Assembly: GCA_002269645.1 (NCBI GenBank) | Contig: NIVC01002433.1 | Coordinates: 1-64,000 of the forward strand | Direction of reading: 5' to 3' | DNA length: 64,000 bases | Source: Macrostomum lignano | Taxonomy: Eukaryota | Part shown: piece by piece, positions 1-18,333 of the stretch | Layout of the letters: each line of letters starts with the position of its first letter | How positions within the stretch are numbered: position 1 is the stretch's first letter | The notes under the pieces: model-generated | Seen by the model: the letters and a program-made list of their open reading frames with translations, nothing else | Told to the model about the DNA's origin: nothing | Databases searched by the model: none | Position numbers and translations under genes: made by a program

Positions 1-1410
1 TTCTTGAGATCATAAACATAGATGTTACAATGGCTATAAGCAGTCTTCGGCTCGGGGAGCCCCAGGCCCCGATAAGATCCCAATGTCGTCCTCAAGAAGG
101 GCCTGAGCCCCAACTCCATCAGGGTGCTTACTAAGCTGTTCAATACTTGCTCCCTGCTTGGGTACTTTCCCAAAGCCTGGAAAAAGGGAATCATAAAGAT
201 GATTCCCAAACCCGACAAACCCAAAGGTCAAATTGACAGCTACCGCCCCATCTGCCTAACTTCCTGCTTAGGAAAATTATATGAAAAAATACTCGCTAGA
301 AACTTTCGAACCATTCTTGAAAACCGTAACATTATTAGTTCCGATCAATGTGCATATCGCCAAGATCACTGCACCTTTGACAACATAGTCAGGATCACAG
401 ATGACGTTCTAAAAATGCTGCAGCTTGGGCAATACACCCTTGGTGTCTTTTTTGATGTTAAGGGCGCCTTTGACGGCGTTTGGCATGACTCGCTACGCCT
501 TGATCTTCTCGACAGTGATCTTCCTCACAGCCTCATGAGGTCCATTTCTAGCTACCTTGACGACAGAGAAGTGCTGGTCCAGGTTGGGGGGCCCTGAGTG
601 AGAGCCTCAACCCGGCGGCAGGTGTTCCCCAGGGAGGTGTCCTCTCGCCGCTCCTCTTCCTGGTTTATGTCAACAAAATTCCGCTTCCTGCTGACAGAAA
701 GGTTCGCATTAGTCAGTACGCAGATGACCTGGCCGTTTGGGCCAGCGCCAGAACTTCATCACTTTCTGCTAAGCTGCTAAATGCCTACTTCAAGAAGCTC
801 AAAATCTGGTTAGACGAGGTTGGGATAATTATCAACCCAAATAAGAGCAAAGCTATTTCTTTTTTCAAGCCCTTGGGCAATCACCGGACAGGACCTGATA
901 GGCCCCCTTGCTGCTTGGCAATCAGTCCATTCCTTACTATGACTCTGTGCGTTTTCTAGGAATTATCCTTGATAAACAGCTCACCTATAAACCTCATCTC
1001 ATCAAGGTAATTAATTCTGCGCAGAACAAGCTCCTTGCGCTGCAGCGCCTTGCTAGTAAGACCAAAATCTCCCAGCAGGGGCTTAGACTGATTTATAGGA
1101 TGTATATTGAGAGCTGCATAATTTATGGCGCTCCAGTCTTGATACACCTCAGGATGCTCAACTCAACAAGTTGCAGCTGCTACAGAACAAAGCGCTGAGA
1201 ACGTCACTAGACGCTCCACTGTGCACTAAAATTAGTTACTTACACTACATCACCAAAATGCCGATGATCAAAGAGCGCATTTGGAATCTAGCCAAGCGCT
1301 GGTACAGAAACACCGAGATGTCTGGAGTACACAACTTCGACCTAGACACCAAGAAATGGGATAGGAGAGGGTTCAGGATGCCTGCAGTGGCCCGTCTGAG
1401 AAATGTCTAA
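1..1410 (+). pseudogene. Frameshifted LINE ORF2 reverse transcriptase (element A)
   Basis: ORFs 124-597, 908-1198 and 1171-1410 join via frameshifts near 590, 900 and 1160. No RNase H follows the RT. Confidence 0.9.
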
Positions 1411-2071
1411 TGTGGCACCCATGCTGTGCTTAGGTTCAACTGTGAGCAGTATTGTCAAACAAGAGCAATTATTGATTAAAACCTAACAAACTCTTGATGT
1501 AATTGTAAAAAAAAATGAAATCTCAAATAAATCTGTGATAAAAAATTTTTTACATTAGAAAATATTCATGACAATACATGTATACAATTTTATTGTACAA
1601 CTAACAATTATTTCATTTTATGCCATATTCCAAATATTTAATGCCAATATGCCAAATATTCAATATACAATAACACTGACGCAACTTTGCCTATACCCCT
1701 CGCCTCTTTGTGCTCTGCTTCATCTTCTGTCTCTCTCCCGACTTTGAACTGTACATGTTTTAATCATCTCTACTGTTTTAATTTGTTTTTACATCTCCTC
1801 ACAATTTCCTTTTTCGATTTGTTCTAATGCCTTCGTTCTCTTCATCTTCGATTCACCTTAGTCAGATTTGTTTTATTGCTTCGATTGCTACTTTATATAT
1901 TATCTGATACACTGTTTTATTTGTTTTATTTTATGCACTTTTTAACAAAATATTGAAATCGAATGTCAATAAAAACTCGATAACCTACAAATACATTGTG
2001 CGTAAAGAGCCGAAAAGGCTGAAGCGCCGGGCCTATTTAAGCCCGAATACTCAACAATGAATGAATGAATG
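1..2071 (+). mobile_element. LINE A: 3' part of a Jockey/I-group non-LTR retrotransposon (RT, 3' UTR, (AATG)4 tail)
   Basis: RT motifs across frameshifts: SYRPICLTSCLGKLYEK, FFDVKGAFDGVWH, GVPQGGVLSPLLF, QYADDL (~715-735), FLGIILDKQLTY. AT-rich UTR 1411-2055, then AATG x4 at 2056-2071. The 5' part lies outside the window. Confidence 0.93.
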
Positions 2072-2415
2072 TTGTTTTCCTTTATTCCGTACCTGCTCAA
2101 CTTGCTTGCTTAACACCGCCTGCTCTACATTGCCTGCTCTACATCTCCTGGTGCTCTCCGGCTCTACAGCAGCATCGCACTACGTGCAGGTCCTACATCG
2201 GTCTTTATCTGCACCGGCGTCAGCGGCTACGCACTGCGTACTGGTCCTACTTCTTGGTGGCGGCGGCGGCTCGGTGGCTTGGCTCGGTGGCGGCGCCGTC
2301 GGCTCGTGCGAGACAGCGGCTTTTAGCGCCAGACTTAACGCTTTCAAAGATGCTTGACTGCTTGACTGCTTGATCATCAAAGATGTCCTCCCGCAAGCCT
2401 TTCACCATCTAACTA

Positions 2416-3012
2416 ATGGTAGACCAGAAAAAAAGAAAAATTGTCTGGTACGGCCCGGCATACACCTATTCCGGTGGTAGTCTGGAAGCCAATGAGGCCT
2501 GGTACCCGGAGTTAACCAAGCTAGTTACCTGGCTCCACGTCGAACTTGGGCTACCACTGTTCAACTCCGGCCTAGTAAATTTTTACGAATCGGGGCATGT
2601 TAACATCCCCTGGCACGCTGATGACGAGACCGAACTTGGCCCCAATCCGACAATAGCCTCTATTTCGCTGGGAGCTACAAGAGAATTAGCCATTAGATCC
2701 AAGCAGTCCAAAAACATTGTTTTTAAGCAACCTCTCGAGTCTGGCAGTTTGTTGGTAATGAGTGGTGCAACTCAGAAATATTTTGAGCACAGCATCTACA
2801 AAGACCCTAAAGTAAAAGACATTCGCGTTAATCTCACCTTTCGAATGACTTCTGAAAATCTGGTCTCCGAGTCTCCAGCGCCCTCGTTGAACCCTTGCGT
2901 TCGCCAGTCGCAGGATCTCATCACTCCCACTGATGATCAGCAGTCATCTCTTGCGACCTTGATGACCAAGACTCTATTCGTAGAAAAGCTGAAGAAGAGC
3001 GAGTCAACCTAG
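2416..3012 (+). CDS. AlkB / 2OG-Fe(II) dioxygenase domain (ALKBH2/3-like), N-terminal part of LINE B ORF1
   Basis: RKIVWYG..YTYSG, FNSGLVNFYESG, WHADDE (His 2614, Asp 2620), IASISLGATR, LESGSLLVMSGATQ, FEHS (His 2788), RVNLTFR (ends 2844). This is the classical AlkB HxD..H..RxxxxxR signature. Confidence 0.92.
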   Translation: MVDQKKRKIVWYGPAYTYSGGSLEANEAWYPELTKLVTWLHVELGLPLFNSGLVNFYESGHVNIPWHADDETELGPNPTIASISLGATRELAIRSKQSKNIVFKQPLESGSLLVMSGATQKYFEHSIYKDPKVKDIRVNLTFRMTSENLVSESPAPSLNPCVRQSQDLITPTDDQQSSLATLMTKTLFVEKLKKSEST

Positions 3013-3881
3013 AGAAAATCAGAAGGGCTAGCCAATCCAGCATTAAATCCAGCGCCAACAATAGCCAGTCCAGGCAGACCAAATCTGCACCAGTCATCTT
3101 CGAAGTCGCCCTGGAAGGAAATGATCCAATATAGTTTGAGTGGCTGCTAAAGACTAATTTCCGTAACGTAAGAATCAAATCAGTTAAAGATCTGTGCCAC
3201 TCACCTGGCTACATTGTCCACCCTGAGCATCCCAGGGACTTCAATACGCTCTTAACAGCTCCAATGAAAATCAGCTCAATTAATGACTTTGAAGTCACCA
3301 GGCGCACTGCTGCTAAGAGACCTGTCCACCAAGCTAATGACCAGCCGAGGGTTCGAGCCCCCCTCAAATCTCCGAACGTTCTCTCCTTCATTGTCCGTAA
3401 CGTTCCGCTAGCGGTCGACGTAAGCGGTCTAGCCAAGCACCTAAATGACTCTGACCAGCAACTCTCAATAGATGGAGCAGTTAGAATTATCTCCAAACAG
3501 ACTGGCCAGCCGACTCCCTTCGTAAGGCTATTCACCAAGTGCCAAAGAGTAGTAGATAGCTGCATCCAACAGGGTATCTACCTAGGATTTGTGAAATATA
3601 GATGCGAAGAATCTAATAGTCTCCCGCCCGTCAGAGCTATCCAGTGCAAGCGGTGCTCAGGACTCGGTCACCATGAGGCGCGCTGCACAGCAAACTATAG
3701 GTGCAACAAATGCGCTGGCAATCATTTCTCAATGGATTGCCCCAAAGACCAAGTCTTCAAGTGTGCAAATTGCGGCGAAAACCATCCGGCATTCTCATTC
3801 AAATGCTCTAAAGTCCGAGAGGCTAACGAATTGGCAACCGCAAAGAACATGACCGAATCCGAAAGCAACAACAACAGCTGA
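2952..3881 (+). CDS. LINE B ORF1 central and C-terminal part: RRM-like region plus three Gag-type zinc knuckles
   Basis: CKRCSGLGHHEARC (CX2CX4HX4C), CNKCAGNHFSMDC (CX2CX3HX4C), CANCGENHPAFSFKC (CX2CX3HX6C), the typical Jockey/I/R1 ORF1 triplet. The same frame extends back to 2952 with one internal TAG near 3130. Confidence 0.88.
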
Positions 3882-4511
3882 GAGCCCATAAGCCAGAAAA
3901 CAGCCAGACCCTTGGGGAAACCTTCGGCGTCCCTGGGCCAATCTCCTACGCAGATGCCATGCGTCCGCAGCCGGTTCTCGGGCCAATAGCCTTCTCTAAC
4001 CGAGCTGCCAAAGCTGCCGAAGCCCAACGAGCATCATTCCCCGCCTCATCTGCCAATGCTGCCGCCGCCGCCTCAGTCGCCTCAGCCAACCAGAATGCTC
4101 TGTCTGATGCAATCAACACATTTGAGCCGCCAACAACTGCTCCAGCCAATCCGGTCATGATGCATCCAGGAGTTGAATCAACTAACCAAATAGGACCAAG
4201 TGAGAGGGGCTTTTTCTCTCGGGAAGATGTGCTCGATGTAGTGTTACAGGCGCTCGACCGACTCATGAACATTGAACAAGGACGGATGTTCACATCCTGG
4301 GAGGCGGGGCAATCGTCTTCCGGGTGGTGTCTGAAGTCGTTAGGGTGTTCAGGTGTCAAAGAGGGCCTGTTGCTGAGTCAGGGGACACCAAAGTCGTGCA
4401 AGCGAACGGAGGTGAAACCTGAACTCTCTTTCTATAGTCTGCTTAGCTCTGCTCTATTAATTCAACTCTCCTCGTAATACTTCTACGACTAAGACTAAAA
4501 GTCACTCTGTT

Positions 4512-5186
4512 GTGCGGGACTCCCTCATTATTGGACACCTGAACTGCAACGGGCTCAGCAACAAAATCTATGAGATAATCTCGTGGCTAAAAAATGAGGA
4601 CTTAGACATAGGACTTTTCTCTGAAACTGGCTTAGTTGACACAAACCCTTTCTTTGTCCAAGACTACGCCATCCTTAGATTTGATAAACCTCACTGTAGA
4701 AGAGGCCTCGCAGTTGCTTACAAAAATAATCTAAACATTATGAATGTCAAAAAGTATTTTGATAACAGTAACCATGAGTTTATTAGCTTTGAGGTTTTCT
4801 TAAAGCATAATAGGCTAAACAAACTTAATATAGTCCTCTTCTACAGGGCGCCTAACCCTACCAAGCTAAACTGCGACATTCTAAAAAATCTTTTCACAAA
4901 TTCCTCCACTTTGGTTATAGGGGACTTCAACTGTAACCACTCTGCCCTAGGTGGAGACACAAATTACAATTACCCCGGCAGACAGCTCTTTGACTGGCTT
5001 GAAAACCACCCCAACCCCCCTATTTTATTAAATAACTATGGTGAATTCAGCAGAGTGTGTAATCGTGGCGGCTCCCACACCGCTAATGAGCTGGACTTGG
5101 GGCTTTGCTCCCCCAATCTTGGTCCTCACACTAGTGAGGTTCCCATAGGTGATGACATGGATAGTGACACTTTCCCATCATCATAA
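4512..5186 (+). CDS. APE-type endonuclease of LINE B ORF2
   Basis: HLNCNGL, DIGLFSET, GLAVAYK, IVLFYRAP, VIGDFNCNH, ELDLGL and SD motifs. Confidence 0.92.
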   Translation: MRDSLIIGHLNCNGLSNKIYEIISWLKNEDLDIGLFSETGLVDTNPFFVQDYAILRFDKPHCRRGLAVAYKNNLNIMNVKKYFDNSNHEFISFEVFLKHNRLNKLNIVLFYRAPNPTKLNCDILKNLFTNSSTLVIGDFNCNHSALGGDTNYNYPGRQLFDWLENHPNPPILLNNYGEFSRVCNRGGSHTANELDLGLCSPNLGPHTSEVPIGDDMDSDTFPSS

Positions 5187-5639
5187 AAGTTTACCTTGAC
5201 CCAAACTGTAAAATTTCGAACCCCCCCCCTAAAAGCTTCTGGAGCACTGATTGGGAAACCTTCAGGGCTGTTCTCCAGGACAAACTCAGTGATAAACTAA
5301 TCAACTATCTCAGGTTGGCCACTCCAGCTGAATTAGATAGGGCTGTAGACCTGCTAACCCAGGGCTTGCACGACACGATTGAGGAGGTGATCCCAAACAG
5401 AGATCCCGCGGACAACTCCCCCCAGACATAATAGCAAAAATTAAACACAGGAGGAAACTTAGAAAACTCTTTAGAAACACCCGGATTGACCATTTTATGA
5501 TTCAGGCGAATCAAGCCGCTAAGGAGATCAGGCTCGCCATCCGTATGCATAGATATAGGAAGTTTGAAAAGTTATGCAAAAAAATTTCCAAAACCAGCTA
5601 CCGAAATGAACCAAAATTTTTTTGGATTGATATAAAAAA

Positions 5640-6853
5640 ATGACGGGGGAAGGTCCTAAACCGATCTCGTACCCCCCAATCGTTCTCAAGGATTCTGTTG
5701 CTGAAACTGAAGCTGAGAAAGCACAGGCCTTCAAGGAGTTCCTTGAGGCTCAGATGCGTCCCTGTCCAGACAGATCCTCCCAGCTCTATAAGAGAATTGA
5801 GGCCCAAAAAGATCATGAGATCTACAAACCCCATAACATCTTAGCTGCGTTAACCTATCATAAAGACCATGCCGATCCTGATAATCCAGACAAAAAAGAC
5901 ATTGAAGCTGATATTCTCAACATCATAGATCAGGATGTTCTTTGGGAGAGTAGGAAGCTCAGGGCAGGAGGGGCTCCCGGGCCTGACAAGATTCCGAACA
6001 TTGTCCTCAAATTTGGCCTGAGTCCAGACTCCATCAGAGTCCTTGCAAAGATCTTTAATGCTAGCTTCCTCCTTGGATACTTCCCAAGCGATGGAAAATG
6101 GCTACTGTCAAAATGATACCCAAACCAAATAAACCTAAAAACCTCATTGATAGCTATAGGCCTATCAGCCTTACCTCTTGTTTAGGCAAGCTTTATGAAA
6201 AAACCTTAGCATGTCTGCTAAAATACTCAATGACTACTTTATCCGACTCAAAAGGTGGCTTGATGCCGTTGGCATTACTATTAATCCCTCTAAAAGTAAA
6301 GCAATCTCCTTCTTTAAGGCAAATGGCAACAAAACAGGCCCGGGTGAACCCCTGATCAAACTCGGGAACAACATAATTAGTTATTATGACACTGTCACCT
6401 TTCTTGGAATGGTCCTAGACAAACAACTCAACTACAAATCTCATATTAACAAGGTCGTTGGTTCTACCACAAATAAGGTTGCTGCGTTAGCCAGAATGGC
6501 AAAAAGAATCTCCCAGCACGGACTAGGACTGATCTACAGGTCTTTCATTGAAAGTACCATCACTTACGGTGCTCCCATCCTTCTTAATCTTCCCGACTTC
6601 CAAGTCAACAGAATTCAGGTACTCTAAAACAAGGCTCTGCGCATCTCCCTTGATGCTCCGCCTTACATAAAAAACTCTTACATCCACTTGGTCACCAACA
6701 TGCCCATGATCAAATATCGCCTACTTAGCCTAGGGAAAAATGGTTCAAAAAGCGTTAGTGGTATTCACAAATTCAAAGATGACACCAAAGAATGGTTGAG
6801 ACCCGGCTTTCGAGTCCCGGTCACAGCTGCGCTCAGGAAAAAACTTAATGCCT
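5640..6853 (+). pseudogene. LINE B reverse transcriptase with frameshifts and an internal deletion
   Basis: APGPDKIPN, SYRPISLTSCLGKLYEK, then an abrupt jump at ~6208 to SAKILNDYF...FLGMVLDKQLNY. The AFD, QG and YADD blocks present in element A are absent. Confidence 0.88.
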
Positions 6854-7834
6854 AATTTATAGCCAGATTCCTGGCTATAAAACAAATATTGTGCTTTTCA
6901 GTTGGAGTTTGGTCTGTCGACCCTCTTCCCTTTGTATAATTGCAATTTTTTGCCGTATGACGGAACGGCTCCCGAAGTTATCGCCTGCCTTCCAAGGGGT
7001 ACTAGCATTGGCTAGGCTGCATAGCCCTCTCTATCCACAGCTCCCTCAGGCGGGGACGTTTTAAACCTGGAACCCCAAACCAGGTGGACCAAAAGGCCCT
7101 TAACTCTGACTGAGTGAGCTGTTATTCACCCCGTAGGGTCCAGTTAGCTATTTATACGGACAAAGTTTGACTCGACTAGTTTGATTAGGATTTGACATTA
7201 TATATTGATTATTCCTTGGAATAATTGATTAAAATATAGACACGAGCACCTCTCTCCGGGAGAGAATCCAACCTTTACTGCAGGCGTATTCTAATTGATG
7301 ACTAAGTATTAATCCAATGCAATTATTTTTGTATTCAAATTATTAAGACATCATATTTTTTAAAAATATTGCCAACTGTTTTACCTCATTTTTTCCAATA
7401 TTGCTAAAAAACTTTTAATTTTGTCCAATATTGCTCAAATATTTTCTTTGTGTTTTATTCTTTGTTTTTAATCCTAAATTTATAAAAAAATGATCGTTTT
7501 AGTTTATTTCTCAAACTCTCAAATTCTTGTTTTACACTTGACCTCATCTTTTGTTCCTTTTTATACTAGTATTATTTGTTAATAGCTACCCCAAATATTT
7601 GTTTTATGTAAATACTCCTCGATTTTATTTTTTTCCTAAATTGGACGACTATAACTTCTAATAATTCGAACATACGCGTAAAAATATAAAGTTGCGCAAG
7701 AGGCCTTCAAAGGGCTGAGGCGCAGGGCAACATTATATTAGCCCCTACTTATTAAAGTAAAAAAAGTAAAAGTTGTTTTCATTTATTAATTTTGGCTTTA
7801 TTTTGTCAACACTTAGTACTAGCATCAATCTGCA

Positions 7835-8679
7835 ATGGAAGTAGAAGTCAATAGCAAAAGATGTGCCTCTAGAGACACTGACTCGCCGCCAGTCAGCACC
7901 AAGAAGGCCAACAACCGGTCCTCCTTCGGTCCAGACCAGAGGTCCTGTTCTGCGTCCTCCAGCAATGCGCCGACTTGTGTGCAACAGCAGACAGTGACTG
8001 AAGAACTTCATGTGGCCAGCGATGGTGAGAGCCAGCCTGTCAAGAGTAGTAAACTAGCAGACTTAGGAAAAGCAACTAAAATATTGATACTCAGTCTACC
8101 AGAACCAGACCTCACAGATGACAAAACTGGCCAGCCTTTAACTAACTGCAAAATTAGATATCTGCCAAATGCGCTCAAATCTTCTGAAGCCAAGCTAAAT
8201 AAAATTTTAATGGAAGACATTTATCCAAACTCATTCCACCATCTAACCAAGGGCAAGCCTGAGGCCAGGAAAATAGTTTGGTATGGGCTTGAGTACACCT
8301 ACGGGGGTACTAAGATTGAGTGCAACGACGCTTGGCACCCAGTCGTCACTCACTTAGCCATTTGGCTTCACGTCGAGCTTAGATTGCCACTAGCTAATTC
8401 GTGCCTGATCAACTTTTATAAAGATGGATCGGTAGCCATCCCATGGCACTCTGACAACGAACCAGAGTTAGGCCACGACCCGACCATTGTGTCGGTGTCG
8501 CTGGGAGCTCAGCGAGACTTCCAGCTTAGGACTAAGGGCCAGAGCCAGAATATAGTCTACTCGCAGAGGCTTGCCAGTGGTAGCATCACGATAATGAGTG
8601 GGCTACGCAACGGTTCTTGCAACACTCAATCACAAAGGACCTCAAAGTTAAGGAACCTCGAATTAATTTAACATTCAGA
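7835..8679 (+). CDS. AlkB / 2OG-Fe(II) dioxygenase domain at the N-terminus of LINE C ORF1 (1-nt frameshift at ~8601)
   Basis: RKIVWYG, NSCLINFYKDG, WHSDNE (His 8447, Asp 8453), IVSVSLGAQR. After a single-base shift it reads ATQRFLQHS (His 8623)...RINLTFR (ends 8679). Confidence 0.9.
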
Positions 8680-8796
8680 GTCACTAGTGATAACAGAATC
8701 TTCGACTCACCAGCTTCTTAGCCTGGCAATCCTTGCATCCAGCTTCCTGAAGAGGCCATCACCTGCGACCTCGATGACGCAGAGTCTGTACGCCGT

Positions 8797-9480
8797 ATGG
8801 CCAGGCAGGAGGCTGAAAACATTAGCAAAATTAGATCACGTTCCAGCAGTAACTCGAGGCGAAAAGCTAAATCCGACCAAACAGACCAAACTCAACCAGC
8901 CAATCAGCGGTCTCAAGCAACCACTCAGCAATCTAAACCTAACACTCAGCAGTCAGAATCTCAGAAGGTAGCTACTCAGCAGTCAAAGCCAAACACTCAG
9001 CAGCCAAACGCAGCCAATCAGCACACACAATCAGGCACTCAGCAACATTCGTCAAACACTCAGCAGAATCATGCAGCCAATCGGCACTCACAATCAGGCA
9101 CGCAACAATCACTAGCAGCCACTCAGCCAGGCACTCAGCAGTCAAAATCAGTTACTCAGCAGTCACAACCAGTCACTCAGCAGTCACCACCAGGCTTACA
9201 GCAAACACAACGAGAGACGCAGCAGACACAATCAACCAACCAATAAACTAATTTTGCAAACCAGACTCGACAGCCAGCTACGGCTAGCACTGTGAATTCC
9301 GTGCAGTCAACTAAACCTAAGCATCCAGACACTCAGCAATCAAGCACCCACACTCAGCAGCCTAATAGCTACCATCTGCCAGCAACTCAGCAATCAACCA
9401 CTCGCACTCAGCAGCAAGCACTCGCACTCAGCAGCCAAGCACTCACACTCAGCAGCCACAAGCACGCACTCAGCAGTCAA
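8797..9480 (+). repeat. Degenerate ACTCAGCAG-based repeats encoding a Q/S/T-rich linker in LINE C ORF1
   Basis: Many TQQS/TQQP units in ORFs 8797-9246 and 9292-9510. Confidence 0.75.
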
Positions 9481-9837
9481 ACTCACAACAATCTAATAAT
9501 TCTAAATTAACTAAAATTACGCCAGTTGTATTTGAGATGCCCTTTGAGGCCAAGAATCATATTAAATTCAAACATTAAAAAAAATTAACTTTCCTAACAC
9601 TTGCATCGTGTCAGTAAAAGAGCTGTATCATAGCTCAAGATACTACGTATTTACTAATTCTCCACACGACATGAACAACTTATTGACAACAACACTAAAA
9701 GTTAACGAAATTAATGGGCACACTGTCACTAGGCGCCTGCCTCAGGCCAACCGACACCTCTCATCAGGATGTTTACAAAGTCAAGGGCAACTTACGACAC
9801 CTGCCTGGAGAACGGCATAAAGCTTGGGCACTGAAAT

Positions 9838-10107
9838 TCCGGTGCGAAGAACCGCACAACCTTCCACCGGTCAAGGAGATTCAGTGCCACAGGTGTCAAG
9901 GCCTTGGACACACCGAAAGCAGGTGCAACGCCGGTTTTGTGTGCAACGTGTGCCGGGACGCACTATTCCGGCGACTGCCCCAAAGATACGGGCTTTAAGT
10001 GCGCTAATTGTGGGGGTGAAAACCCGGCGTTCTCCTTCAAATGCCCAAAGGTTCAGCATGCAAATGAGAGGCGACTGAAAAAGAGCATCATAGGATTCAA
10101 GCTTTAA
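9838..10107 (+). CDS. LINE C ORF1 zinc-knuckle region
   Basis: FRCEEPHNLPPVKEIQCHRCQGLGHTESRC, CNVC/AGTHYSGDC (frameshifted), CANCGGENPAFSFKC; collinear with element B. Confidence 0.85.
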   Translation, partial: SGAKNRTTFHRSRRFSATGVKALDTPKAGATPVLCATCAGTHYSGDCPKDTGFKCANCGGENPAFSFKCPKVQHANERRLKKSIIGFKL

Positions 10108-10159
10108 GACTTAAATTCGAACAGACTAGAAAATTAGAACCTACTCAAACACTAGCTGA

Positions 10160-11155
10160 TGTAGTGAGCCGCTAGTTTATGGTTAGGCGTCGCCCTTGTC
10201 AGCTGTTCCCTCGCCCTCGCCCTGGGTTGCTGTCTGCCGCTGGTCAGCTTCCCACCCCCCCTTTTGTCTGCTTGTTGTCGCCCGCCCTTTTGTCGCTCGG
10301 TTGCGTCTCTGTTCTCAGCCCCCAGCCTCTCGGCTGTTAGCTGTCTCTGTTTCGCTCCCGTCCCGTTTTCCCTGTCTTGTGAGCAAGTCACATGACAGTT
10401 CTTGCGTTCTTTGAGTCTTAAAGTGCAGTAAACATGTTTACTGCACTCGTTGGCCCTGTTTACCGGGTGAGTCACGTGCTTTCGGACCCCTCCCTTCTCT
10501 AAGGAGAGGAGTGACTCATGTTGCTAAAAATAGCAACTGAGTCACAGCCGCGTGTACTCTGGCCGGGGACCTCAAGTGACGTCAGTTCTAAAAATAGAAC
10601 AATTCACGAGGTCTTCCGCGCGCTTGTACCCTGCCCGAGACTCTCGAGTGACGTCAGTTCTAAAAATAGAACAAGTCACGAGGTCTTGAGCGCGGGTGTT
10701 TCCCGGCTATAAATAGGAGCCCTCTCCCCCTTGTTTCCGTCAAGGAGTCTTCTTTCTGTTCAACCTCGAGTTCTACGTCTGCGTGTGACTAAATCCCGAG
10801 TGTCTGAGCCTTTGCGCATATTGATTCTATTCCTATTGCTCCGACTGAAACCCGACCAAGTCAACCCAAGTCTACGAGAGGCTAACTCAGCCCTCCCTCT
10901 ACCATCCTAGCCCGGCAGGTACTGCTGACGAGACGCCCTATTCGTTGCGCTCTAAATCTGCACGCTGTGCTGTGTTCGTTGACTTCATTATTTCGTTCCG
11001 ACGGGAAGCTCACCTCACCGAAGGCCGAGACCTGAAGGAACTGATGGCAGCACTACCTACGCTACTGAGAGTTGAGAGAACTTCCCACTGAAGAGGCTCG
11101 AGTCTTAAGGTAATCCTTAAGTGCCTAAACCGGCAAGAAACCCAACTGTACTTCA
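10160..11155 (+). mobile_element. Probable 5' LTR of Gypsy element 1
   Basis: TGTAGT...ACTTCA termini (imperfect inverted), TATAAATA at 10708-10715, followed by a PBS and gag. No matching 3' LTR was found in the window. Confidence 0.7.
10468..10715 (+). promoter_or_regulatory. LTR enhancer/promoter: 3 MEF2-consensus sites, 3 AP-1 sites, 2 CRE sites, TATA box
   Basis: CTAAAAATAG at ~10524, 10588 and 10660; TGAGTCA/TGACTCA at 10468, 10512 and 10538; TGACGTCA at 10577 and 10649; 41-bp direct repeat with 72-bp period. Confidence 0.6.
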
Positions 11156-11156
11156 C

Positions 11157-11176
11157 TGGTGACGCAGCGGTGAGAT
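11157..11176 (+). other. Primer-binding site, tRNA-Leu-like
   Basis: TGGTGACGCAGCGGTGAGAT versus the tRNA-Leu 3' complement TGGTGGCAGCGGTGGGAT, 1 nt after the LTR-terminal CA. Confidence 0.6.
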
Positions 11177-12418
11177 CCGACTACGACACACCCAAGCCAA
11201 CCTCTCTTTCGAGAACGACATCGGCCAGTAACTACTACGAGTTCAACATGTTCAACGAACGAGACGAGAGCCGGTGCAGCAGCCGGCTGGATCAGCACAT
11301 CAGCAGTTCGAGGCCTGCGGCAGCGGACGCCGCAGCAGCAGCAGCGATCAACGACTTTGGTCAGCAGCCAACGCCGAGGCAAGGTGCGAGAAGCGAGGTG
11401 TCCGACGACCCGCCAGACGAGCTTCTGCAAGGCCTGGACAACATCGGCCGGAACATCATGCACCAGGACGTGAGGACCATCATGGCAGCTCTGCAGCAGC
11501 AGATGGAGCGGCCCGTGAGTAAACAAGTTAAAATTGTGAAGTTTACTCCAAGTCAGGACATTCATGTCTGGCTTGCCGCGTTCGAGCAGCGTTGCGAGAT
11601 GGAGCGCATCGTCGACCCGTTCGAGATGAAACAACACCTCATCGCGAGTCTTGATTTGGCTACTGCGTATCCTTCCTTGCTTAGTATGAATCTTCCGCGT
11701 TTCGCCAGCTACGAGGAGGTCAAGCAGCGTCTGATTGAGCGATTTGCCCGTCATGGTGGTGCTGATGAGTACAGAGAACTGTTGCGACGTCGTCAACAAG
11801 GCAAGAATGAGTCAGCAGAAGAGTTTGCTGACGCCCTGAGAACTCTTGGTGAACGTGTATCCTCGGATGCACCCTGAAGACCACGAGAAGGAGATTGCGG
11901 ATCAATTTCTTGCTGGTATTCGGACGACTCCAGACCTGCGTGAACGGCTGTACTGGGTCCGCCCAAATAATCTTCTTGCTGCGATTCGAGAACTACGACG
12001 ACTAGAAGGCGCCAAAGAATTGGCGCAGCGAACCGCTCAACCCCCGGTTAGGATGTTGGACGGGGAGCAGGACGGCGACCCGAAGCCCGACGTCACCGCC
12101 CAAGCCTTGCTAACTCTAACCGACTTGATCGAGAAGCAGCAGCGACTGCTTGATCACCTAGTGCAGCGTGACCAGCAGCAGGTAGCAAGTCCGCCGCAGA
12201 GGGCCATAGTCCGTTATGGCTGCGGACAGCCAGGTCACCGCATTACCCAGTGCCCGATGCGCCAGAACCAGGGAAACGGCCAGGCGGAGAGCGACAACGG
12301 CACCGCCCTCCGCGAGGTCCAAGTCCAGGCTACGTGGCAGACTCCGAGAGGTCACCAGAAGAAGAGGATGTCGGCTGTGCAGGCGCCAATGCCCACTCCG
12401 ACAGTCGCTCGTCAGTAA
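11170..12418 (+). pseudogene. Gypsy 1 gag (frameshift at ~11860; degenerate zinc knuckle)
   Basis: Retrotransposon gag-like WLAAFEQRCE...YEEVKQRLIERF...RRQQGKNESAEEFADALR, DQFLAGI, and knuckle RYGCGQPGHRITQC (first Cys replaced by Arg). Confidence 0.85.
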
Positions 12419-15400
12419 GTGACGCGGAGTGCGGAGGTTTCGTGGACACCTCCCCGAATCAAAAAATCCATGCGCGTGAGGCCGATCCGTACGTCACAGG
12501 TCGAGTTGCGAGTCGAGAGGTCCCTTTCTTGCTTGACAGCGGCAGCCGGAAAAACTTTCTTGGTTCGTCAACCTGGGCCGCTATTAGACGCCGGATGCCT
12601 CGTTGTATTATATCGCATGCTATTCCCGATTGCGTAACTATGTATGATGGGACGCAGCTCCCACTTGCTTGTAAGGTGACCATTCCGGTGGAGTTCGGTG
12701 ATGTCGTCGCGGACACCGAATTCCTCGTCATGGTCTCCGATTGCGAAAATTTGCTTGGCGTATCGTTTATGCGAGAGCACTGCCAGAACTTGGACTTCGC
12801 TCAAGGAATGTTGAAGTTTAACAATGGCGCGTGCATCCCCGTTCGTTATTCGCGGCGTGAGCTTCAGAACTGCCGAGTGTACACCTCTGAGAAGTGCACC
12901 CTGCCGCCTAGAAGTTCAGCGCTGCTTGCCGTCAGACTGGATGACGGCCACCCTGAGAATCGAGGATCGCCATCAATTGTCGAGCTGGTTAAGTCGAGGC
13001 TGCATCCCAGCTGCAACGCTCTGGAAGCAGCGCCTGCTCTGATGACGATGCCTGAAGGTCGCGGCTACATTGAGGTCGTCAACACCGCCGACAGCGAGGT
13101 GTTCCTGCAAGCCGGTATCCGTGTTGGTGTTGCAACCCCACTCCGAACTGCCGACCTGATGTACTTGAGCGAGACGCCCGAACCTGAAGTGCGACACCTC
13201 CCGAAGAACTCTGAAGAGTCCAGCACAGCATGGCTAGATGAAGTCGAGATCAACAGCGAATTGTCCAAAGAACAACATCAAAGAGTGCGAGATCTACTAG
13301 TCGAATGTCAAGCGGCCTTCTCCAAGCACTCGCTAGACGCCGGCCTGACTCACCTGGTGACCCACGAGATCATCTTGAAGGACCGGACACCAGTCGCGCT
13401 ACCACCGCGCCGAATCCCGCTTCATCTGAAGGACAAACTCGACGCCCTGCTGGACGAGATGTTGGCGAAGCACATCATTCGCCCTGCCTACTCGAGCTAC
13501 AATTCGCCAATGCTCATCGTGCCCAAGAAGGACGGCAACATCCGACTAGTCCACGACTTCAGAGCTCTCAACAACAGGTGTGTGTATCACCCGTATCCGC
13601 TGCCGCACATCCAGGAAACCTTCGCGAAGCTTCGTGGTGCTCAGTGGTATTCCAGCTTGGACCTTGCTCAAGGATTCTGGCAGATCCCGCTGCGCGACTG
13701 CGACCAGCACTTGACGGCATTCTCAGTAATCGACCGCGGCCAATTCTGTTTTAACGTTCTACCGATGGGTCTCCACGATAGTCCCGGCAGCTTTCAGCGT
13801 TGCATCAATAAGCTCCTGGACGGCCTGACGCCAAGGACTGCGCTTGGCTACATGGATGACATCGTGGTGCACTTAGTGACTTTCGAGGAACAGCTGGATA
13901 ATTTGCGAACTGTACTCCAGCGCATCATCGCAGCCAACCTCAAAGTGAAACCGAAGAAGTGTCATTTGTTCCTCAAGGAGCTGCATTATTTAGGTCACGT
14001 CCTGACTCCCGACGGCCTGAAGACCTGTGAGGACAAGATTGCGCAGATCCGTGATTGGCCCGTGCCACAGTCCGTTACTTAACTGAGACAATTCCTAGGC
14101 CTCGCCAATTACTACCACAAGTTTGTCGACGGCTACGCTGGAGTGGCTGCGCCGCTGCATGCCCTGACGCGAAAGGACATTGGCAGCCTGCGGCAGCACT
14201 GGACTCCCGAGCATCAGGTAGCGTTCGACACCTTGAAGAAGAAATTGTGTTCTACTGAAGTTCTCGCTCTGCCTGAATTTAATTCTGATCCTGCTGTGAA
14301 GTTTGTCCTCGACACGAATGCCTCTGATATTCGAATAGGCGCTTGCCTTGGACAACTGCAATCCGACGGCGTCGAACGTCCAATTGCATTCTTTAGCCGT
14401 AAACTTCGCGATCCTGAGAAGCGCTACACGGTCACGAAGAAAGAGCTGCTTGCAATTGTGGACGCTATGCGACATTTCCGTCATTACCTAATCGGCAAGA
14501 AGTTTGAAGTTCGATCCGATCATCGGGCCTTACTGTGGTTACTGAACCAGACTCAGGCCACAGGTATTTTAGGCCGCTGGATCGAACGCCTAAGCGAGTT
14601 CCGCTTCCAGCTCAACCACCGCAAGGGCAAGGACCACGCCAACGCTGATGCCCTGTCAAGAGGACCGGAGGCGCCGCCGATCTCCTTCGAGCATGGCAGA
14701 CTGCTAGAGCAACCTGGTTCTACAGCCCGACCCGGTGACGACCACGACCTGGAACCGGATTTGGACCCGAAACCCGAGGCCACTGCCAGAGCAGCCCTCC
14801 TGAAGACAGTCCACTCTCGCTGCTTGGAGGCCGAGACTGACCTGGACGAAGACCTGGAAGCCACCGCGCCAGCAGCCTTCCAGCACGACGCCCACCGCTG
14901 CAGTCAACGCCTGGAGACCGGCCTGGACGACAACTCAGAGGCCACTGCGACAACAGTCCTCTGCCGCGATGCCCATGCCGCCCGCTGCAATTTGGAGACC
15001 AACCTGGACAAGACCTTGAGGCCACTGGGGACACAGACCTTGACGACGCCCAAGACTACAGGTCTCGGACTCTGAAGACGCACACGGACCAAGATTCAAA
15101 GGCCACCGCACCAGCAGCCCTTCTGATGACGGCCCGCAACGCAACTCCAGGCAAGCAATTTAACTACAACCCCTCCGAGCCTTTCGCTGAGATTTCTCGC
15201 CGTGTTGACAGAGGCCAGAATCTCGCGCCAGCTGCAAGGTCGAAGCTCTGTCCCCCGGGCCGACAGACAGCTGCTCATCGCCTGTGCGGAAAGTCGAGTC
15301 CCCCTTTGCGACACCGTCCAGTGCAGGAGAAGACTCACCCAATTTCGACGACGACTGAGCCGACGGCTACGGCTGCCTGTGACGAGGCGTGCTTCACGTG

Positions 15401-17654
15401 TTGCGTCCCGCCCTACAGCCAAGAGTCGCCTGGGCTAGGCAGTGGAGGCATGCGCGCTGCTCCATCTGCGGAATTTTCTGTCAAGAGAGCGACGATGAGA
15501 ACTTCGATTCGAGATCAACGGACGTACTCCGACGTTGAGACAAAGTCCCTCGGAGCGACCTAATCCTGACGCCGACAAGACGGTGCCGTGTGATCGACTT
15601 GGAGCCATTAAAGCGGAGACTGCGGGAATCCGGACCCCTCAGCCATGCCACGCTGTGCTCACTGATTTTCTGAAGCTGCCGATGACTCGCCAACAGTTCG
15701 TTGACGCCCAACGCGCTGACCGAGCCATCAGCTACGTGCTCAACCTGGTCGAGAACGAAGCCCCGAAGCCTGAGTTCGACGCCCGGTTGCGACTGACGAA
15801 GGAGCAGCGGAACCTGCTCGGATACTACGATAACCTGGAGGAGGACAACGGCCTGCTGCTGATTGACCTGTCCGATGGCCAGCAGCCGCCAAAGGTTGTT
15901 CTGCCTGAGGCCCTTGACGCCCAGGTGCTCCAGGAGCTCCACAGTTCGCCACTGTGTGGACACCTCGGCGAGACGAAGACGTTACTGCGGCTACTCTGGA
16001 GACCCGGATTAGCCCGTGCTACCAAGACCTTCATCAGTAAGTGCCGCACCTGCCTTGAAAGTAAATCGCGACGGCGAGAGAGAGTTCCGGTCCAGAGCTT
16101 CCCAGTTTGCGAAGTTCTGGGTAGAATCCACTGTGATGTAGTAGGACCGATCGCGCAGGAGAGCAAGAGCGGCAACCGCTACATCATGACCTTGTGCGAT
16201 GCGCCGTCGAAGTATCCATTCGCCTACCCGATGAGAAACCAGGAAGCCAAGACAGTCATCAAGCTTCTGCAGGAGCGCTTCATCCCCGAGTTCGGTGTAC
16301 CATGCTGGATCCACACCGACCAAGGCACCAACTTCACCAGTTCGGCCTTCAAGAAGTTCTGCGACCTGTTTGGCATTCGGAATACGACAACAACACCGTA
16401 CAATCCAGCTTCCAATGGACAAGTCGAGAACCTCAACAAGCAGTTGAAGAGTGTCCTCACCTGTCTGCTCGAGCGCAACCACAACGACTGGGACACCTTC
16501 CTCCCGGCCTGCCTGATGGCTCTCCGCTCCAGCGTGCACCCGGTGACCGGTTTCACGCCTCACTACCTGGTGTTCGGCCGTGACTTCCGACTCCAGATCG
16601 ACAACGCGCTGAAGAAGCTGCCCTAAAGAAGCTGCCCGAGTATGCCGACCTGCCCGACTACGTCAAGGACTTCCAACGTCGCCTGGACGAGGCGACTGAG
16701 CTAGCCAAGGAGCGCCTGCATCTGCACCAGCAACTGCGAGACGAGCACTACTCGAACCTGCCCGCCGCCAAGAAGCTTCAACCCGGTGATCTGGTCTTCC
16801 TCAACAATCCGGTGCTTGAACCGGACGAGGCGGAGAAGTTTCATCGACAGCGCAAAGCACTGTACGAAGTTGTCGAGCCTAAGGGCGAGGTTGTCTACAA
16901 GATTCGACGGAGACTGCCCAACCCGAGAGCTAGACGAGACGAACTAGTCGTCCATCGCCGGAACCTTCTGCTCGTGCCTGACGCTGACTACACGAGGACA
17001 TCTGATCCTGAAGTCGACAAGCCGAAGAAACGCCGGCGGCCGCCCGACGTCCCCGATTGCGCAGGACCCGCGACCCTGACGCCGATTCCCGAAGACGACC
17101 AGGACGACCCCGACGATGATGATGATGACGGCTACGACGCAAGGCCGGCCTTCCGATGGCACTTCCGGCCTTTGGCGATCCCGGAGGTGCAGCCAGGAGG
17201 TGGACCGGTCACGACACCAGCGAACCAGGCAAGTGCACTTCGGCGTGAGCCAGTGCCGTATGGTGAATGTCATTTGCATGAGCCTGTTCTTGATGCGTCT
17301 ATGCCTGCTGTTTCTTTTCCGCCCGTTTCTGCTCCCGTCCCCAGTGCTGATTTTTCTGTGGTCCAGACCCCTGGGCCGTCGCTATGCACCACTCCGGTGG
17401 AAGCGCCTGTAGGAATTGTAGATGCCGGTAGGCCGGCTAGGAATCGTAGGCAGCCTGAGAGGCTGATTATTAATCCTAGGGCCAAGACTTATGTTAGCCG
17501 CATCGCCCGCATCCGCTCGCAAATTGAACCGCATTTCAGCACAGAAATGCACCGCCGAGCATTCAAGCGCACTGAGCGCTCGCCAACCGAAGAGGACCGA
17601 GCCTCTTCCCGCCGCAACCGGCCTAGGACGGAGTTGCCGTTTCCAACGGACTAG
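12250..17654 (+). pseudogene. Gypsy 1 pol: protease, RT, RNase H, repeat linker, integrase (disrupted)
   Basis: LLDSGS protease; YNSPMLIV, YPLP, SSLDLAQGFWQI, YMDD; in-frame TAA at 14080; DTNAS/KELLAIV/SDH/ADALSR RNase H; H-H-C-C and CDVVGP/TDQG/VENLN integrase; frameshift at ~16625 from a short duplication; C-terminal domain to 17654. Confidence 0.95.
14745..15140 (+). repeat. About 5 degenerate 81-bp repeats between RNase H and integrase
   Basis: CCTGGAC anchors at 14841, 14922 and 15003 (81-bp period); 27-aa LETxLDxxxEATA units. Confidence 0.75.
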
Positions 17655-17659
17655 GCGAG

Positions 17660-18333
17660 ATGAATATCGCAGTAGATTGCGTTGCTGACACGATTAGCAG
17701 CAGCAGTACGACTGCTGGTGGTGGCGCTTCTGCGGCCGCGGTGTCTGCAGCTCCGTTGCTGGACGACATGGACCTGCGCGCTCAGATCCGAATGTCGTCA
17801 GTGAACCAGCGGAAACGTGAGCCCGAGACGAGGTCCTTGACAGCGCGCTGTCCCGACGTCGTCGTGTCGGCCACCGACTATGCAAGGATAAAGCATGCTG
17901 TGTCCGCCTATGTCAAGGGAGGTTACAGGAGTACTGACGCAGATAAATTGCTTCGGACCTTGTACCTAGCAATTTTCACGGAAGATGAGCTGACTACCTG
18001 CTCTTACACGGGACGTAGGTCGACAAAAACTGGTCCGCCACCAAAAGCGGAAGTGGCAAAGAGAAAAAATTCGCCATTAAGGCGTTTATTCACGGCCTGC
18101 AGTTTCCCAACCAAATTCCGGAAAGAAACTATGCCGAGATGTTTAAGTGCATTGGATTCTGTACTGCGCGAAAACTAAAAAAATCGCTCAAAGTGGCACC
18201 CAGCGGCGATAATAAAAGAAGCAATGAGGTGGCGACGATCGACATCGATGCCGATGAGGACGCCAACAGTGGTGACAACGGCGATCACAATGACGACGAA
18301 GCTGCAGCCTCTCATCCATCTGCAAATCCATGA
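17660..18333 (+). CDS. BEN-domain-like ORF (frameshift at ~18060)
   Basis: KLLRTLYLAIFTEDELTTCSYTGRRS...K, then in the shifted frame EKKFAIKAFIHGLQFPNQ...MFKCIGFCTARKLKK. Matches the BEN pattern LFTxEEL..S.TG.RS...AI..FV...FP by eye. Confidence 0.65.

What the first reader, a model, noticed from the sequence alone, without database searches (positions are those of the whole stretch)
7835..10107. A second, diverged LINE family keeps the same AlkB-ORF1 fusion
Element C has the same order: AlkB, then NPC..TCDLDD..KIR linker, SVK.L.HS block and three knuckles. My hand alignment gives about 83 of 138 identical residues (~60%) to B's AlkB, with all Fe- and 2OG-binding residues conserved and mostly conservative substitutions. 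Homology extends on both sides of the domain (FHHLT..PE.RKIVWYG upstream). This argues for an old capture maintained by purifying selection across family radiation, not a chance insertion.
Basis: partly seen in the sequence, partly recalled or inferred. Interest (0 to 1): 0.85.

Follow-up and report, generated by a model that had tools for sequence, protein, structure and literature searches.

The report
LINE retrotransposons carrying an AlkB demethylase
A decayed jumping gene (LINE) in what looks like a Macrostomum-type flatworm genome has an ALKBH2/3-type nucleic-acid demethylase fused to its RNA-binding protein; selection has kept the same fusion in at least six diverged LINE families, which suggests these elements clean methyl damage or marks off their own RNA.

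Summary
Window 7835-10172 (+) is the ORF1 of a dead, 3'-truncated LINE copy ("C"). Its order is N-terminal AlkB dioxygenase domain, NPC..TCDLDD..KIR linker, Q-rich repeats, RRM-like block, three CCHC knuckles. This is the order of element B (2071-7760).

B and C share 94/150 AlkB residues but only 61% of nucleotides. pN is 0.26 and pS 0.84, so this is protein-level purifying selection between two distinct families.

The same architecture occurs in two more Macrostomum lignano families and in two families assembled from unrelated public sequencing runs. One of those is an intact full-length element (AlkB-ORF1 843 aa, APE-RT ORF2 948 aa). AlkB, ORF1 core and endonuclease diverge in parallel. The LINE-borne AlkBs are each other's best matches, ahead of the ~145 closest non-TE AlkBs kept from a library of 1.8 billion representative proteins.

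By sequence and predicted fold the domain is ALKBH3/ALKBH2-like, not ALKBH5/FTO-like, and every Fe/2OG ligand is kept.

The best reading is one old fusion, probably serving to demethylate m1A/m3C on the element's own RNA or cDNA. That activity is inferred, not shown. I found no published description. I rate it a new variant of a known kind.

The parts
7772..7834 (+). Element C, presumed 5' end and 5' UTR (GTTGTTTTCATTTATT...)
   Evidence: The same 5'-terminal string starts element B at 2071 (GTTGTTTTCCTTTATT), directly after the tail of the preceding element. That this is the true 5' end is an inference.
7835..8134 (+). C ORF1 start codon and N-terminal extension (MEVEVNSKRCASRDTDSPPVSTKK...)
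   Evidence: The N-terminus is shared with M. lignano protein P0009 (KWCSRDTDSPPSVSTK). tblastn of P0009 residues 4-245 maps to 7868-8665.
8135..8688 (+). C AlkB (Fe(II)/2OG dioxygenase) domain, broken by a 1-nt deletion at 8602
   Evidence: Pfam PF13532, E=4e-20. 94/150 residues identical to B. HxD 8447-8455, His 8623-8625, RxxxxxR 8659-8679.
8719..8721 (+). In-frame TAG stop between the AlkB domain and the linker in copy C
   Evidence: Direct reading and translation.
8725..8844 (+). Conserved linker GNPCIQL..ITCDLDDAESVRR..ENISKIRSRS
   Evidence: Also present in B (2887-3035) and in M. lignano P0001/P0009/P0010/P0158.
8880..9480 (+). Q-rich low-complexity spacer made of degenerate 21-bp (7-aa, ..TQQS..) repeats; contains a TAA stop at ~9244
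   Evidence: TRF finds period 21/42/63 arrays. Q-rich spacers sit at the same place in P0158, P0013 and P0015.
9519..9857 (+). ORF1 core, RRM-like region (TPVVFE.., IVSVKELYHSSRY, GQPTPLIRMF, ALKFRCEE), with several frame changes and a ~60-aa deletion
   Evidence: Alignment with B, P0158, P0011, P0012, P0013 and P0015; coordinates.
9885..10044 (+). Three CCHC zinc knuckles (CHRCQGLGHTESRC; CNVCAGTHYSGDC; CANCGGENPAFSFKC), with a frameshift inside the second
   Evidence: Direct reading. The Cys/His columns are invariant across the five sequences of alignment A3 (B and the four Logan proteins; C is not in A3).
10045..10172 (+). Remnant of the ORF1 C-terminal part (..TLADVVSR, matching LSYADAMRP of relatives), then truncation
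   Evidence: Comparison with B and P0158. A Gypsy-type gag-pol follows from ~11170. No APE/RT of C is found in the window.
2071..7760 (+). Element B, the comparator: AlkB 2304-2853, linker 2887-3035, ORF1 core 3084-3830, ORF1 tail to ~4477, APE 4512-5186, RT ~5390-6856, 3' UTR to ~7760
   Evidence: Pfam hits for AlkB and Exo_endo_phos_2; tblastn with the ORF2 of L001; sequence reading.
1..2060 (+). Element A: 3' part of a related LINE (RT to ~1410, 3' UTR, (ATGA)3 tail), lying head-to-tail with B
   Evidence: Pfam RVT_1 E=5e-16. 50-83% identity to B's RT pieces. Sequence.

Best explanation
SHOWN. Window 7835-10172 is the ORF1 of a dead, 3'-truncated copy of an APE-type LINE. The ORF1 protein of this lineage begins with a complete AlkB-family Fe(II)/2-oxoglutarate dioxygenase domain of the ALKBH2/ALKBH3 type. 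A conserved linker and a Q-rich spacer join it to an ordinary LINE RNA-binding module (RRM-like region plus three CCHC knuckles). The same one-ORF architecture is kept in at least six LINE families that differ by 30-60% in protein sequence. Purifying selection on the AlkB part is as strong as on the RNA-binding core. The simplest history is therefore one old fusion inherited through the radiation of this LINE lineage.

INFERRED. ORF1 proteins coat the element's own RNA, so the fusion puts many demethylase domains on that RNA. They most likely remove N1-methyladenine and N3-methylcytosine. These lesions or marks disrupt Watson-Crick pairing and stall reverse transcriptases. They would be removed from the LINE RNA template, and possibly from the single-stranded cDNA or target DNA, so that translation and target-primed reverse transcription can run to full length. 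This is the same logic as the AlkB domains of plant RNA viruses.
For: Domain identity:
- Pfam PF13532 E=4e-20 (C), 9e-28 (B), and ~1e-30 for intact relatives, covering profile positions 6-194 of 194.
- A PDB profile search gives ALKBH3 at E=2e-30 and ALKBH2 at 6e-22.
- The AlphaFold model of the AlkB part has pLDDT 80-96. Its best Foldseek matches are ALKBH3 bound to 3mC ssDNA (TM 0.75-0.83, 33-35% identity) and ALKBH2. E. coli AlkB and the m6A eraser ALKBH5 reach only TM ~0.6 at ~20% identity.
- N/Y, HxD(D), H and RxNxTFR are kept in all families.

Selection:
- B vs C: pN 0.257 against pS 0.843, p=2e-26.
- Intact pairs P0011/P0012 and P0013/P0015: AlkB dN 0.24-0.30 against linkers 0.62-0.74.

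Breadth and single-ORF fusion:
- P0011, P0012, P0013 and P0015 (757-962 aa) are uninterrupted ORFs with AlkB, core and knuckles.
- L001 is a full element with an APE+RT ORF2.
- In the M. lignano genome loci L005/L006, AlkB is followed by the ORF1 core and a ~930-aa ORF2.

Common origin:
- The ORF1 core is alignable across families with invariant Cys/His.
- Identities are congruent across AlkB, core and APE.
- The TE-borne AlkBs are mutual best BLAST hits, ahead of the ~145 closest non-TE AlkBs retained from the search of 1.84 billion representative proteins.

Analogy: viral AlkB domains repair m1A/m3C and prefer RNA (PMC2553587).
Against: - No enzymatic, expression or retrotransposition data exist. 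Substrate and benefit are inferred from homology only.
- ALKBH2/3-like folds act on DNA as well as RNA, so an RNA preference is not shown.
- Deep nodes of the AlkB tree have bootstrap support <=33%, so monophyly rests on BLAST ranking and shared architecture.
- No AlkB-less sister lineage was found that would bracket the fusion event.
- An AlkB of the same clade also sits next to a probable Penelope-like RT/GIY-YIG gene (L004). The module has therefore moved between element types at least once, so strict vertical descent everywhere is not guaranteed.
- Copy C itself, and B, are pseudogenes and do nothing today.
Confidence: 0.6

Rival explanations
1. The domain works as an epitranscriptomic eraser. 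It removes regulatory m6A (or m1A marks written by the host) from LINE RNA to escape methylation-dependent decay or silencing, rather than repairing damage.
For: An AlkB protein encoded by an orchid Ty3/Gypsy element has m6A demethylase activity in vitro, and its authors propose this role (PMC9289625). m6A is reported to affect L1 activity in mammals (titles and abstracts listed).
Against: Sequence and predicted fold are clearly nearer to the m1A/m3C repair enzymes ALKBH3/ALKBH2 (TM 0.75-0.83, 33-35% identity) than to ALKBH5 (TM ~0.6, 19%). The HSDDE motif is shared with ALKBH3 and with the two ~200-aa, probably bacterial, AlkB-like proteins in the alignment (P0017, P0002).
Confidence: 0.15
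2. The domain acts on DNA, not RNA. It removes 1mA/3mC from the single-stranded target or nascent cDNA during target-primed reverse transcription, for example 3mC made as a by-product of DNA methyltransferases.
For: The best structural matches are ALKBH3 on ssDNA and ALKBH2 on dsDNA. A review states that M. lignano retains DNMT1/DNMT3 and that DNMTs create 3mC (PMC9246332).
Against: The domain is fused to the RNA-coating ORF1 protein and not to ORF2, which handles the DNA. There are no data on nuclear import or DNA binding.
Confidence: 0.15
3. B and C acquired AlkB independently and recently from a host gene, or the juxtaposition is an assembly chimera or a chance insertion of a LINE next to an ALKBH gene.
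For: Bootstrap support for a single LINE-AlkB clade is weak at deep nodes. AlkB modules do occur in other element contexts (P0160 next to a GIY-YIG RT gene; P0102 with an esterase).
Against: - The same N-terminal extension, linker motifs and position occur in B, C and M. lignano proteins.
- Uninterrupted AlkB-ORF1 ORFs occur in several independent assemblies.
- AlkB divergence (42-71% identity) parallels ORF1-core and APE divergence.
- The TE AlkBs are mutual best hits.
Confidence: 0.04
4. The AlkB segment is a functionless passenger that merely hitch-hikes in ORF1.
For: Copies B and C are themselves pseudogenes.
Against: pN is far below pS. All catalytic ligands are conserved across families that are only 42-52% identical. 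AlkB is the slowest-evolving ORF1 segment.
Confidence: 0.03

Closest known systems
AlkB domains in the replicase polyproteins of plant +ssRNA viruses (Alpha-/Betaflexiviridae, some Closteroviridae) (PMC2553587, PMC544882)
   Same: An AlkB-family dioxygenase domain is built into a protein of an RNA-based selfish replicator. Activity on m1A/m3C with a preference for RNA has been shown, and it is read as repair of the element's own RNA.
   Different: In viruses the host protein is a replicase, not a LINE ORF1 RNA chaperone. Those are viruses of plants, and this is a retrotransposon of an animal. The viral acquisition is inferred to be recent and spread by recombination. Here the fusion is old and co-diverges with the element. 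No activity has been measured here.
AlkB (2-ODD) ORF of giant Ty3/Gypsy elements in Phalaenopsis orchids (PMC9289625)
   Same: A retrotransposon-encoded AlkB-family protein that its authors propose acts on TE RNA.
   Different: That is an LTR element with a separate extra ORF and an ALKBH5-like m6A demethylase, recent and confined to one plant genus. Here it is a non-LTR element with an N-terminal domain of ORF1p, ALKBH2/3-like, present in several diverged families.
LINE ORF1 proteins with RRM plus CCHC knuckles ('type I' ORF1p of Khazina & Weichenrieder) and ORF1 proteins with accessory enzymatic domains (SGNH esterase of CR1/L2 elements); both recalled from my own knowledge of the literature
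   Same: The C-terminal two-thirds of the protein has an RRM-like region plus a CX2CX4HX4C / CX2CX3HX4C / CX2CX3HX6C triplet, upstream of an APE-RT ORF2. Modular addition of an enzyme to ORF1 has a precedent.
   Different: To my knowledge, and in the searched library, no ORF1 with an AlkB dioxygenase has been described.
Human ALKBH3 and ALKBH2 (m1A/m3C repair dioxygenases)
   Same: Same fold and the same Fe/2OG ligands, 33-35% identity, best sequence and structure matches.
   Different: Those are cellular single-domain repair enzymes. Here the domain is part of a transposon protein. Which of the two it resembles functionally (ssDNA/RNA or dsDNA) is undecided.

Membership tests
AlkB family of Fe(II)/2-oxoglutarate dioxygenases (Pfam PF13532) | Significant match to the family profile over the whole domain | tested here: met
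   C E=4e-20 (cut short by its frameshift), B E=9e-28, P0015 E=1e-30 over profile positions 6-194 of 194.
AlkB family of Fe(II)/2-oxoglutarate dioxygenases (Pfam PF13532) | HxD...H iron triad and the N/Y plus RxxxxxR 2-oxoglutarate ligands | tested here: met
   C: NSCLINFY, WHSDNE, LQHS, RINLTFR. B: NSGLVNFY, WHADDE, FEHS, RVNLTFR. All other families with a complete domain keep them too; P0018 is cut off before the second His and RxNxTFR.
AlkB family of Fe(II)/2-oxoglutarate dioxygenases (Pfam PF13532) | Double-stranded beta-helix fold with a nucleotide-recognition lid | tested here: met
   The AlphaFold model of relative P0001 has pLDDT 80-96 over residues ~116-304. TM is 0.75-0.83 to ALKBH3 and ALKBH2. 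The model is of a relative (57% identical to C), not of C itself.
AlkB family of Fe(II)/2-oxoglutarate dioxygenases (Pfam PF13532) | Oxidative demethylase activity | not testable with these tools
   Needs a biochemical assay.
ALKBH5/FTO-type m6A erasers | Closest sequence and structure similarity to ALKBH5 or FTO | tested here: not met
   ALKBH5 reaches TM ~0.6 at 19% identity, against 0.75-0.83 at 33-35% for ALKBH3/2. No ALKBH5 or FTO appears in the PDB sequence search at E<=1e-3.
APE-type non-LTR retrotransposon (LINE) | ORF2 with an apurinic-like endonuclease followed by a reverse transcriptase | tested here: inconclusive
   Copy C has no ORF2 in the window. Its relatives do: B (APE 4512-5186, RT to ~6856), L001 (948 aa, Exo_endo_phos_2 + RVT_1) and L006. 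C's membership therefore rests on ORF1 homology.
APE-type non-LTR retrotransposon (LINE) | ORF1 nucleic-acid-binding protein upstream of ORF2 | tested here: met
   Three CCHC knuckles and an RRM-like region align across families. Distant AlkB-less ORF1 proteins with the same knuckle triplet were retrieved.
APE-type non-LTR retrotransposon (LINE) | Assignment to a named RT clade (Jockey, CR1, R1, I ...) | not tested
   No reference RT set was available. The ORF2 search gave only unnamed hits at <=35% identity. There is no RNase H domain in ORF2.
APE-type non-LTR retrotransposon (LINE) | Target-site duplications and a 3' tail | tested here: inconclusive
   A ends in (ATGA)3 and B in an A-rich stretch. 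No TSDs could be defined, because the copies abut each other.

The most novel reading that the evidence does not exclude
A whole lineage of animal LINEs, and at least one probable Penelope-like element that holds the same module, depends on a self-encoded ALKBH3-like demethylase tethered to its RNA by ORF1p. Base methylation of RNA (m1A/m3C, whether damage or host-written) would then be a real barrier, or a host restriction, to reverse transcription in vivo, and retroelements would have evolved their own counter-measure. As a by-product, TE-borne copies may inflate 'ALKB2 present' calls in flatworm genome surveys.
Probability: 0.35. Interest if true: 0.85.

Novelty: new variant of a known kind. 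Interest (0 to 1): 0.65.

Why it matters
LINE ORF1 proteins are usually pure RNA chaperones. An enzymatic nucleic-acid repair or demethylation domain that stays under strong selection across a family radiation says these elements need to edit the chemical state of their own template.

This offers a natural experimental handle on an open question: does RNA base methylation (m1A/m3C damage or marks) limit reverse transcription and retrotransposition in vivo? It parallels what plant RNA viruses and one orchid LTR element do, so the same solution would have arisen in three unrelated kinds of RNA-based replicators.

On the practical side, it warns that ALKBH2/3 presence/absence surveys and gene annotations in flatworms (the 'Fe2OG dioxygenase domain-containing protein' entries of M. 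lignano) include transposon proteins.

Tried and rejected
- Finding C's ORF2 beyond the Gypsy insertion: tblastn with B's APE/RT found nothing downstream. No LTR pair was found in 9800-24000.
- Exact-sequence look-ups of P0001 and of C's ORF returned nothing, so the window's source record was not identified.
- blastn of the window against 42 kb of M. lignano genome (L005/L006) and the Logan loci gave no hit at E<1e-10. The species of the window therefore remains 'Macrostomum-like', not proven.
- RT clade naming: the ORF2 homology search gave 14 unnamed hits at <=35% identity. I had set the E-value limit too strictly, at 1e-20.
- Search for AlkB-less sister ORF1s using a profile of the ORF1 core: only four distant knuckle proteins came back, which is uninformative for dating.
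- NJ bootstrap of the AlkB core: deep nodes are unresolved. In that tree P0102 and P0137 grouped with the LINE AlkBs, but BLAST ranks show their best hits are cellular AlkBs. I therefore rejected them as members of the clade.
- NG86/YN00 dS estimates failed because of saturation. I report pN/pS and LWL85/ML only as bounds.
- Seven literature searches found no report of AlkB in non-LTR elements. The library does not cover subscription journals or Repbase Reports.
Full report
**What is at the coordinates**

The window is a transposon-rich eukaryotic sequence.
- ATG at 7835, followed by a ~100-aa N-terminal extension;
- an AlkB domain at 8135-8688;
- a conserved linker at 8725-8844 (GNPCIQL..ITCDLDDAESVRR..ENISKIRSRS);
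- a Q-rich spacer at 8880-9480, made of degenerate 21-bp repeats;
- an RRM-like region at 9519-9857 (TPVVFE.., IVSVKELYHSSRY, GQPTPLIRMF, ALKFRCEE);
- three CCHC knuckles at 9885-10044;
- a short remnant of the ORF1 tail, to ~10172.

Pfam finds PF13532 (2OG-FeII_Oxy_2) in the 7835-8671 ORF at E=4e-20, and in B's ORF 2416-3012 at E=9e-28. Element B (2071-7760) has the same order, followed by an APE (4512-5186) and an RT (to ~6856).

**The copy is dead**

C carries a 1-nt deletion at 8602 inside the AlkB domain and in-frame stops at 8719 and ~9244. It has at least five more frame changes and a ~60-aa deletion in the RRM-like region. It has no ORF2 anywhere in the window. A Gypsy-type gag-pol follows from ~11170. 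B is also damaged, with an extra base at 2433, a stop at 2355 and a frame change between 2907 and 2946. Nothing said below about function applies to these two copies today. It applies to the active lineages they came from.

**Is the similarity more than chance, and is it selected?**

tblastn of B's AlkB ORF hits C at E=9e-51. B's knuckle ORF hits C at E=4e-25. After frame correction, 94 of 150 AlkB residues are identical (63%), yet only 61% of nucleotides are. Differences at codon positions 1/2/3 are 47/33/95 (chi-square p=1e-13). pN is 0.257 against pS 0.843 (Fisher p=2e-26). dN is about 0.30-0.33 with dS saturated, so omega is at most about 0.14. Post-insertion decay can only push omega towards 1, so the active ancestors were under stronger constraint than this. 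At 61% nucleotide identity B and C are different families by any TE convention.

**The fusion elsewhere**

A word-indexed search with C's ORF found one close relative, a Macrostomum lignano 'Fe2OG dioxygenase domain-containing protein' (57% identity), and otherwise AlkB-like proteins at 34-52% identity over partial alignments, one of them named for the bacterium Halomonas.

An exhaustive HMMER search of 1.84 billion representative proteins, using a B/C/P0001 profile, gave 10,686 hits. A distinct top group consisted of long proteins.
- P0009, P0010/P0158 and P0016/P0161 come from M. lignano.
- P0011, P0012, P0013 and P0015 (757-962 aa) come from Logan assemblies of runs SRR31628392-437.
- These four are uninterrupted ORFs containing AlkB, a spacer, the same RRM-like region and the same three knuckles.

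Contig L001 (9,079 bp) is a complete element. It has an AlkB-ORF1 at 1752-4283 and an ORF2 at 4710-7556 with Exo_endo_phos_2 and RVT_1. In M. lignano genome contigs (GCA_002269645.1; L005, L006) the P0161-type AlkB gene is followed by the ORF1 core and a ~930-aa APE-RT ORF2, which is 39% identical to that of L001.

At least six families in four deep groups therefore share the architecture:
- window B and C, plus M. lignano D;
- M. lignano E;
- Logan F;
- Logan G.

**One capture or several?**

Identity between groups is 42-52% for AlkB, 32-41% for the ORF1 core and 37-44% for the APE. The same groups are recovered by the AlkB and ORF1-core alignments, and the APE is about equally distant between the four groups that have an ORF2. 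Pairwise AlkB and core identities correlate (Pearson r=0.88, Spearman 0.56).

In BLAST rankings, every TE-borne AlkB has other TE-borne AlkBs as its top hits, ahead of the ~145 closest non-TE proteins retained from the 1.84-billion-protein library. They also share a (L/I)LP.A motif at the position where the two ~200-aa, probably bacterial, AlkB-like proteins in the alignment (P0017, P0002) have WQQ.

Neighbour-joining bootstrap on the 143-column core supports only the B/C/D clade (88%). Deeper nodes are unresolved. A single ancient fusion is therefore the simplest reading, but it is not proven by tree topology.

In the two intact pairs, AlkB has the lowest dN of all ORF1 segments (0.24-0.30, against 0.28-0.33 for the core and 0.62-0.74 for the linkers). 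Omega is at most 0.12-0.18.

**What kind of AlkB?**

- Sequence: a profile search of PDB sequences gives ALKBH3 (E=2e-30), then ALKBH2 (6e-22). E. coli AlkB, ALKBH5 and FTO do not appear at E<=1e-3.
- Fold: an AlphaFold model of P0001, built from a 10-row alignment, is confident over the AlkB part (pLDDT 80-96) and disordered elsewhere. Foldseek places it with ALKBH3 bound to 3mC ssDNA and with ALKBH2 (TM 0.75-0.83, 33-35% identity). E. coli AlkB, ALKBH6 and ALKBH5 reach only TM ~0.6 at ~20% identity.
- Catalytic residues: the 2OG ligands N and Y, the HxD..H triad and RxNxTFR are kept in every family, as is the Asp after HxD (HSDDE). Only the dead copy C has Asn at that Asp position.

From established knowledge of AlkB, ALKBH2 and ALKBH3, this is the signature of m1A/m3C oxidative demethylases.

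**Mechanism (inferred)**

LINE ORF1 proteins bind the RNA that encoded them. Fusing AlkB to ORF1p would load the element's ribonucleoprotein with demethylase. m1A and m3C block Watson-Crick pairing and stall reverse transcriptases. Removing them from the template, or from single-stranded cDNA or target DNA, would favour full-length target-primed reverse transcription.

The nearest functional precedent is the AlkB domain of plant RNA viruses, which repairs m1A/m3C and prefers RNA (PMC2553587). An orchid Gypsy element encodes an ALKBH5-like m6A demethylase (PMC9289625). That is the basis for the rival 'eraser' model, which the ALKBH2/3-like fold makes less likely here. A DNA-side role cannot be excluded, for example on 3mC produced by DNMTs, which M. 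lignano is reported to retain (PMC9246332).

**Novelty**

Seven full-text searches found no description of an AlkB domain in a non-LTR retrotransposon. The library does not include subscription journals or Repbase Reports, so this is absence of evidence only. I class the finding as a new variant of known kinds: LINE ORF1 proteins with accessory domains, and AlkB domains in selfish RNA-based replicators.

**Verdict**

Three things remain open: the substrate, the RT clade, and the organisms involved and hence the age of the fusion.

Noticed in passing
window 1-10172; L005 9128-16547; L006 9714-21146: These LINEs lie head-to-tail. A's tail, (ATGA)3 at ~2050-2066, abuts B's 5' end at 2071, and B's A-rich tail abuts C's 5' end at 7772. 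Both 5' ends start GTTGTTTTC(C/A)TTTATT. In the M. lignano genome the P0161-type element forms tandem copies 99.7% identical with a 6,457-bp period. This suggests insertion into, or template switching at, the tail of a resident copy.
   Followed up: partly
window 1999-2045 and 7695-7745: A conserved GC-rich motif (GCG[TC]AA.GAG.C....AAAGG.CTGA.GCGC.GGGC...TTA.GCCC) sits just before the 3' ends of elements A and B, inside otherwise AT-rich 3' UTRs. It may be a 3' recognition stem-loop for the RT.
   Followed up: no
L004 2120-5158 and 5542-7398 (Logan SRR19430222): P0160 (1,012 aa) carries an AlkB of the same TE clade by BLAST rank but has no knuckle core. The next ORF has weak RVT_1 and GIY-YIG hits, the hallmark pair of Penelope-like elements. 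The AlkB module may have moved between retroelement classes.
   Followed up: partly
L007 275-2545 (ENA ERZ23497163): P0102 (756 aa) has two AlkB-like domains followed by a GDSL/SGNH esterase, the accessory domain of CR1/L2-type ORF1 proteins. Its AlkB best hits are cellular, so this may be an independent capture. The contig is too short to show an ORF2.
   Followed up: partly
window ~10175-18200: A Gypsy-type LTR retrotransposon (gag 11170-12418, PR-RT 12250-14082, RNase H 14143-15075, integrase 15535-16626, then extra ORFs to 18178) truncates element C. No LTR pair of 80 bp or more was detected in 9800-24000.
   Followed up: partly
window 18580-18847 and 19828-22000: A 44-bp tandem repeat is followed by a ~2-kb 50-bp (21+29) satellite with a very strong GC skew (+0.56).
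   Followed up: no
window 26089-26862; 24955-25677 and 26817-27443: An intact-looking 257-aa mariner/Tc1-like transposase ORF appears to be inserted within another transposase-like gene whose halves flank it.
   Followed up: no
window 29898-30630; 58796-59629; 61921-62541; 63299-63826: Several long coding-looking ORFs on both strands are artefacts of minisatellite or microsatellite arrays, for example SGGAAAAP..SRQLVSPG repeats and (VMHLT)n.
   Followed up: no
M. lignano proteins P0001, P0009, P0010, P0158, P0016, P0161: UniProt/NCBI entries named 'Fe2OG dioxygenase domain-containing protein' or 'hypothetical protein' are LINE ORF1 proteins. Surveys reporting ALKB2 as retained in M. lignano (PMC9246332) could be confounded by such TE copies.
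   Followed up: no
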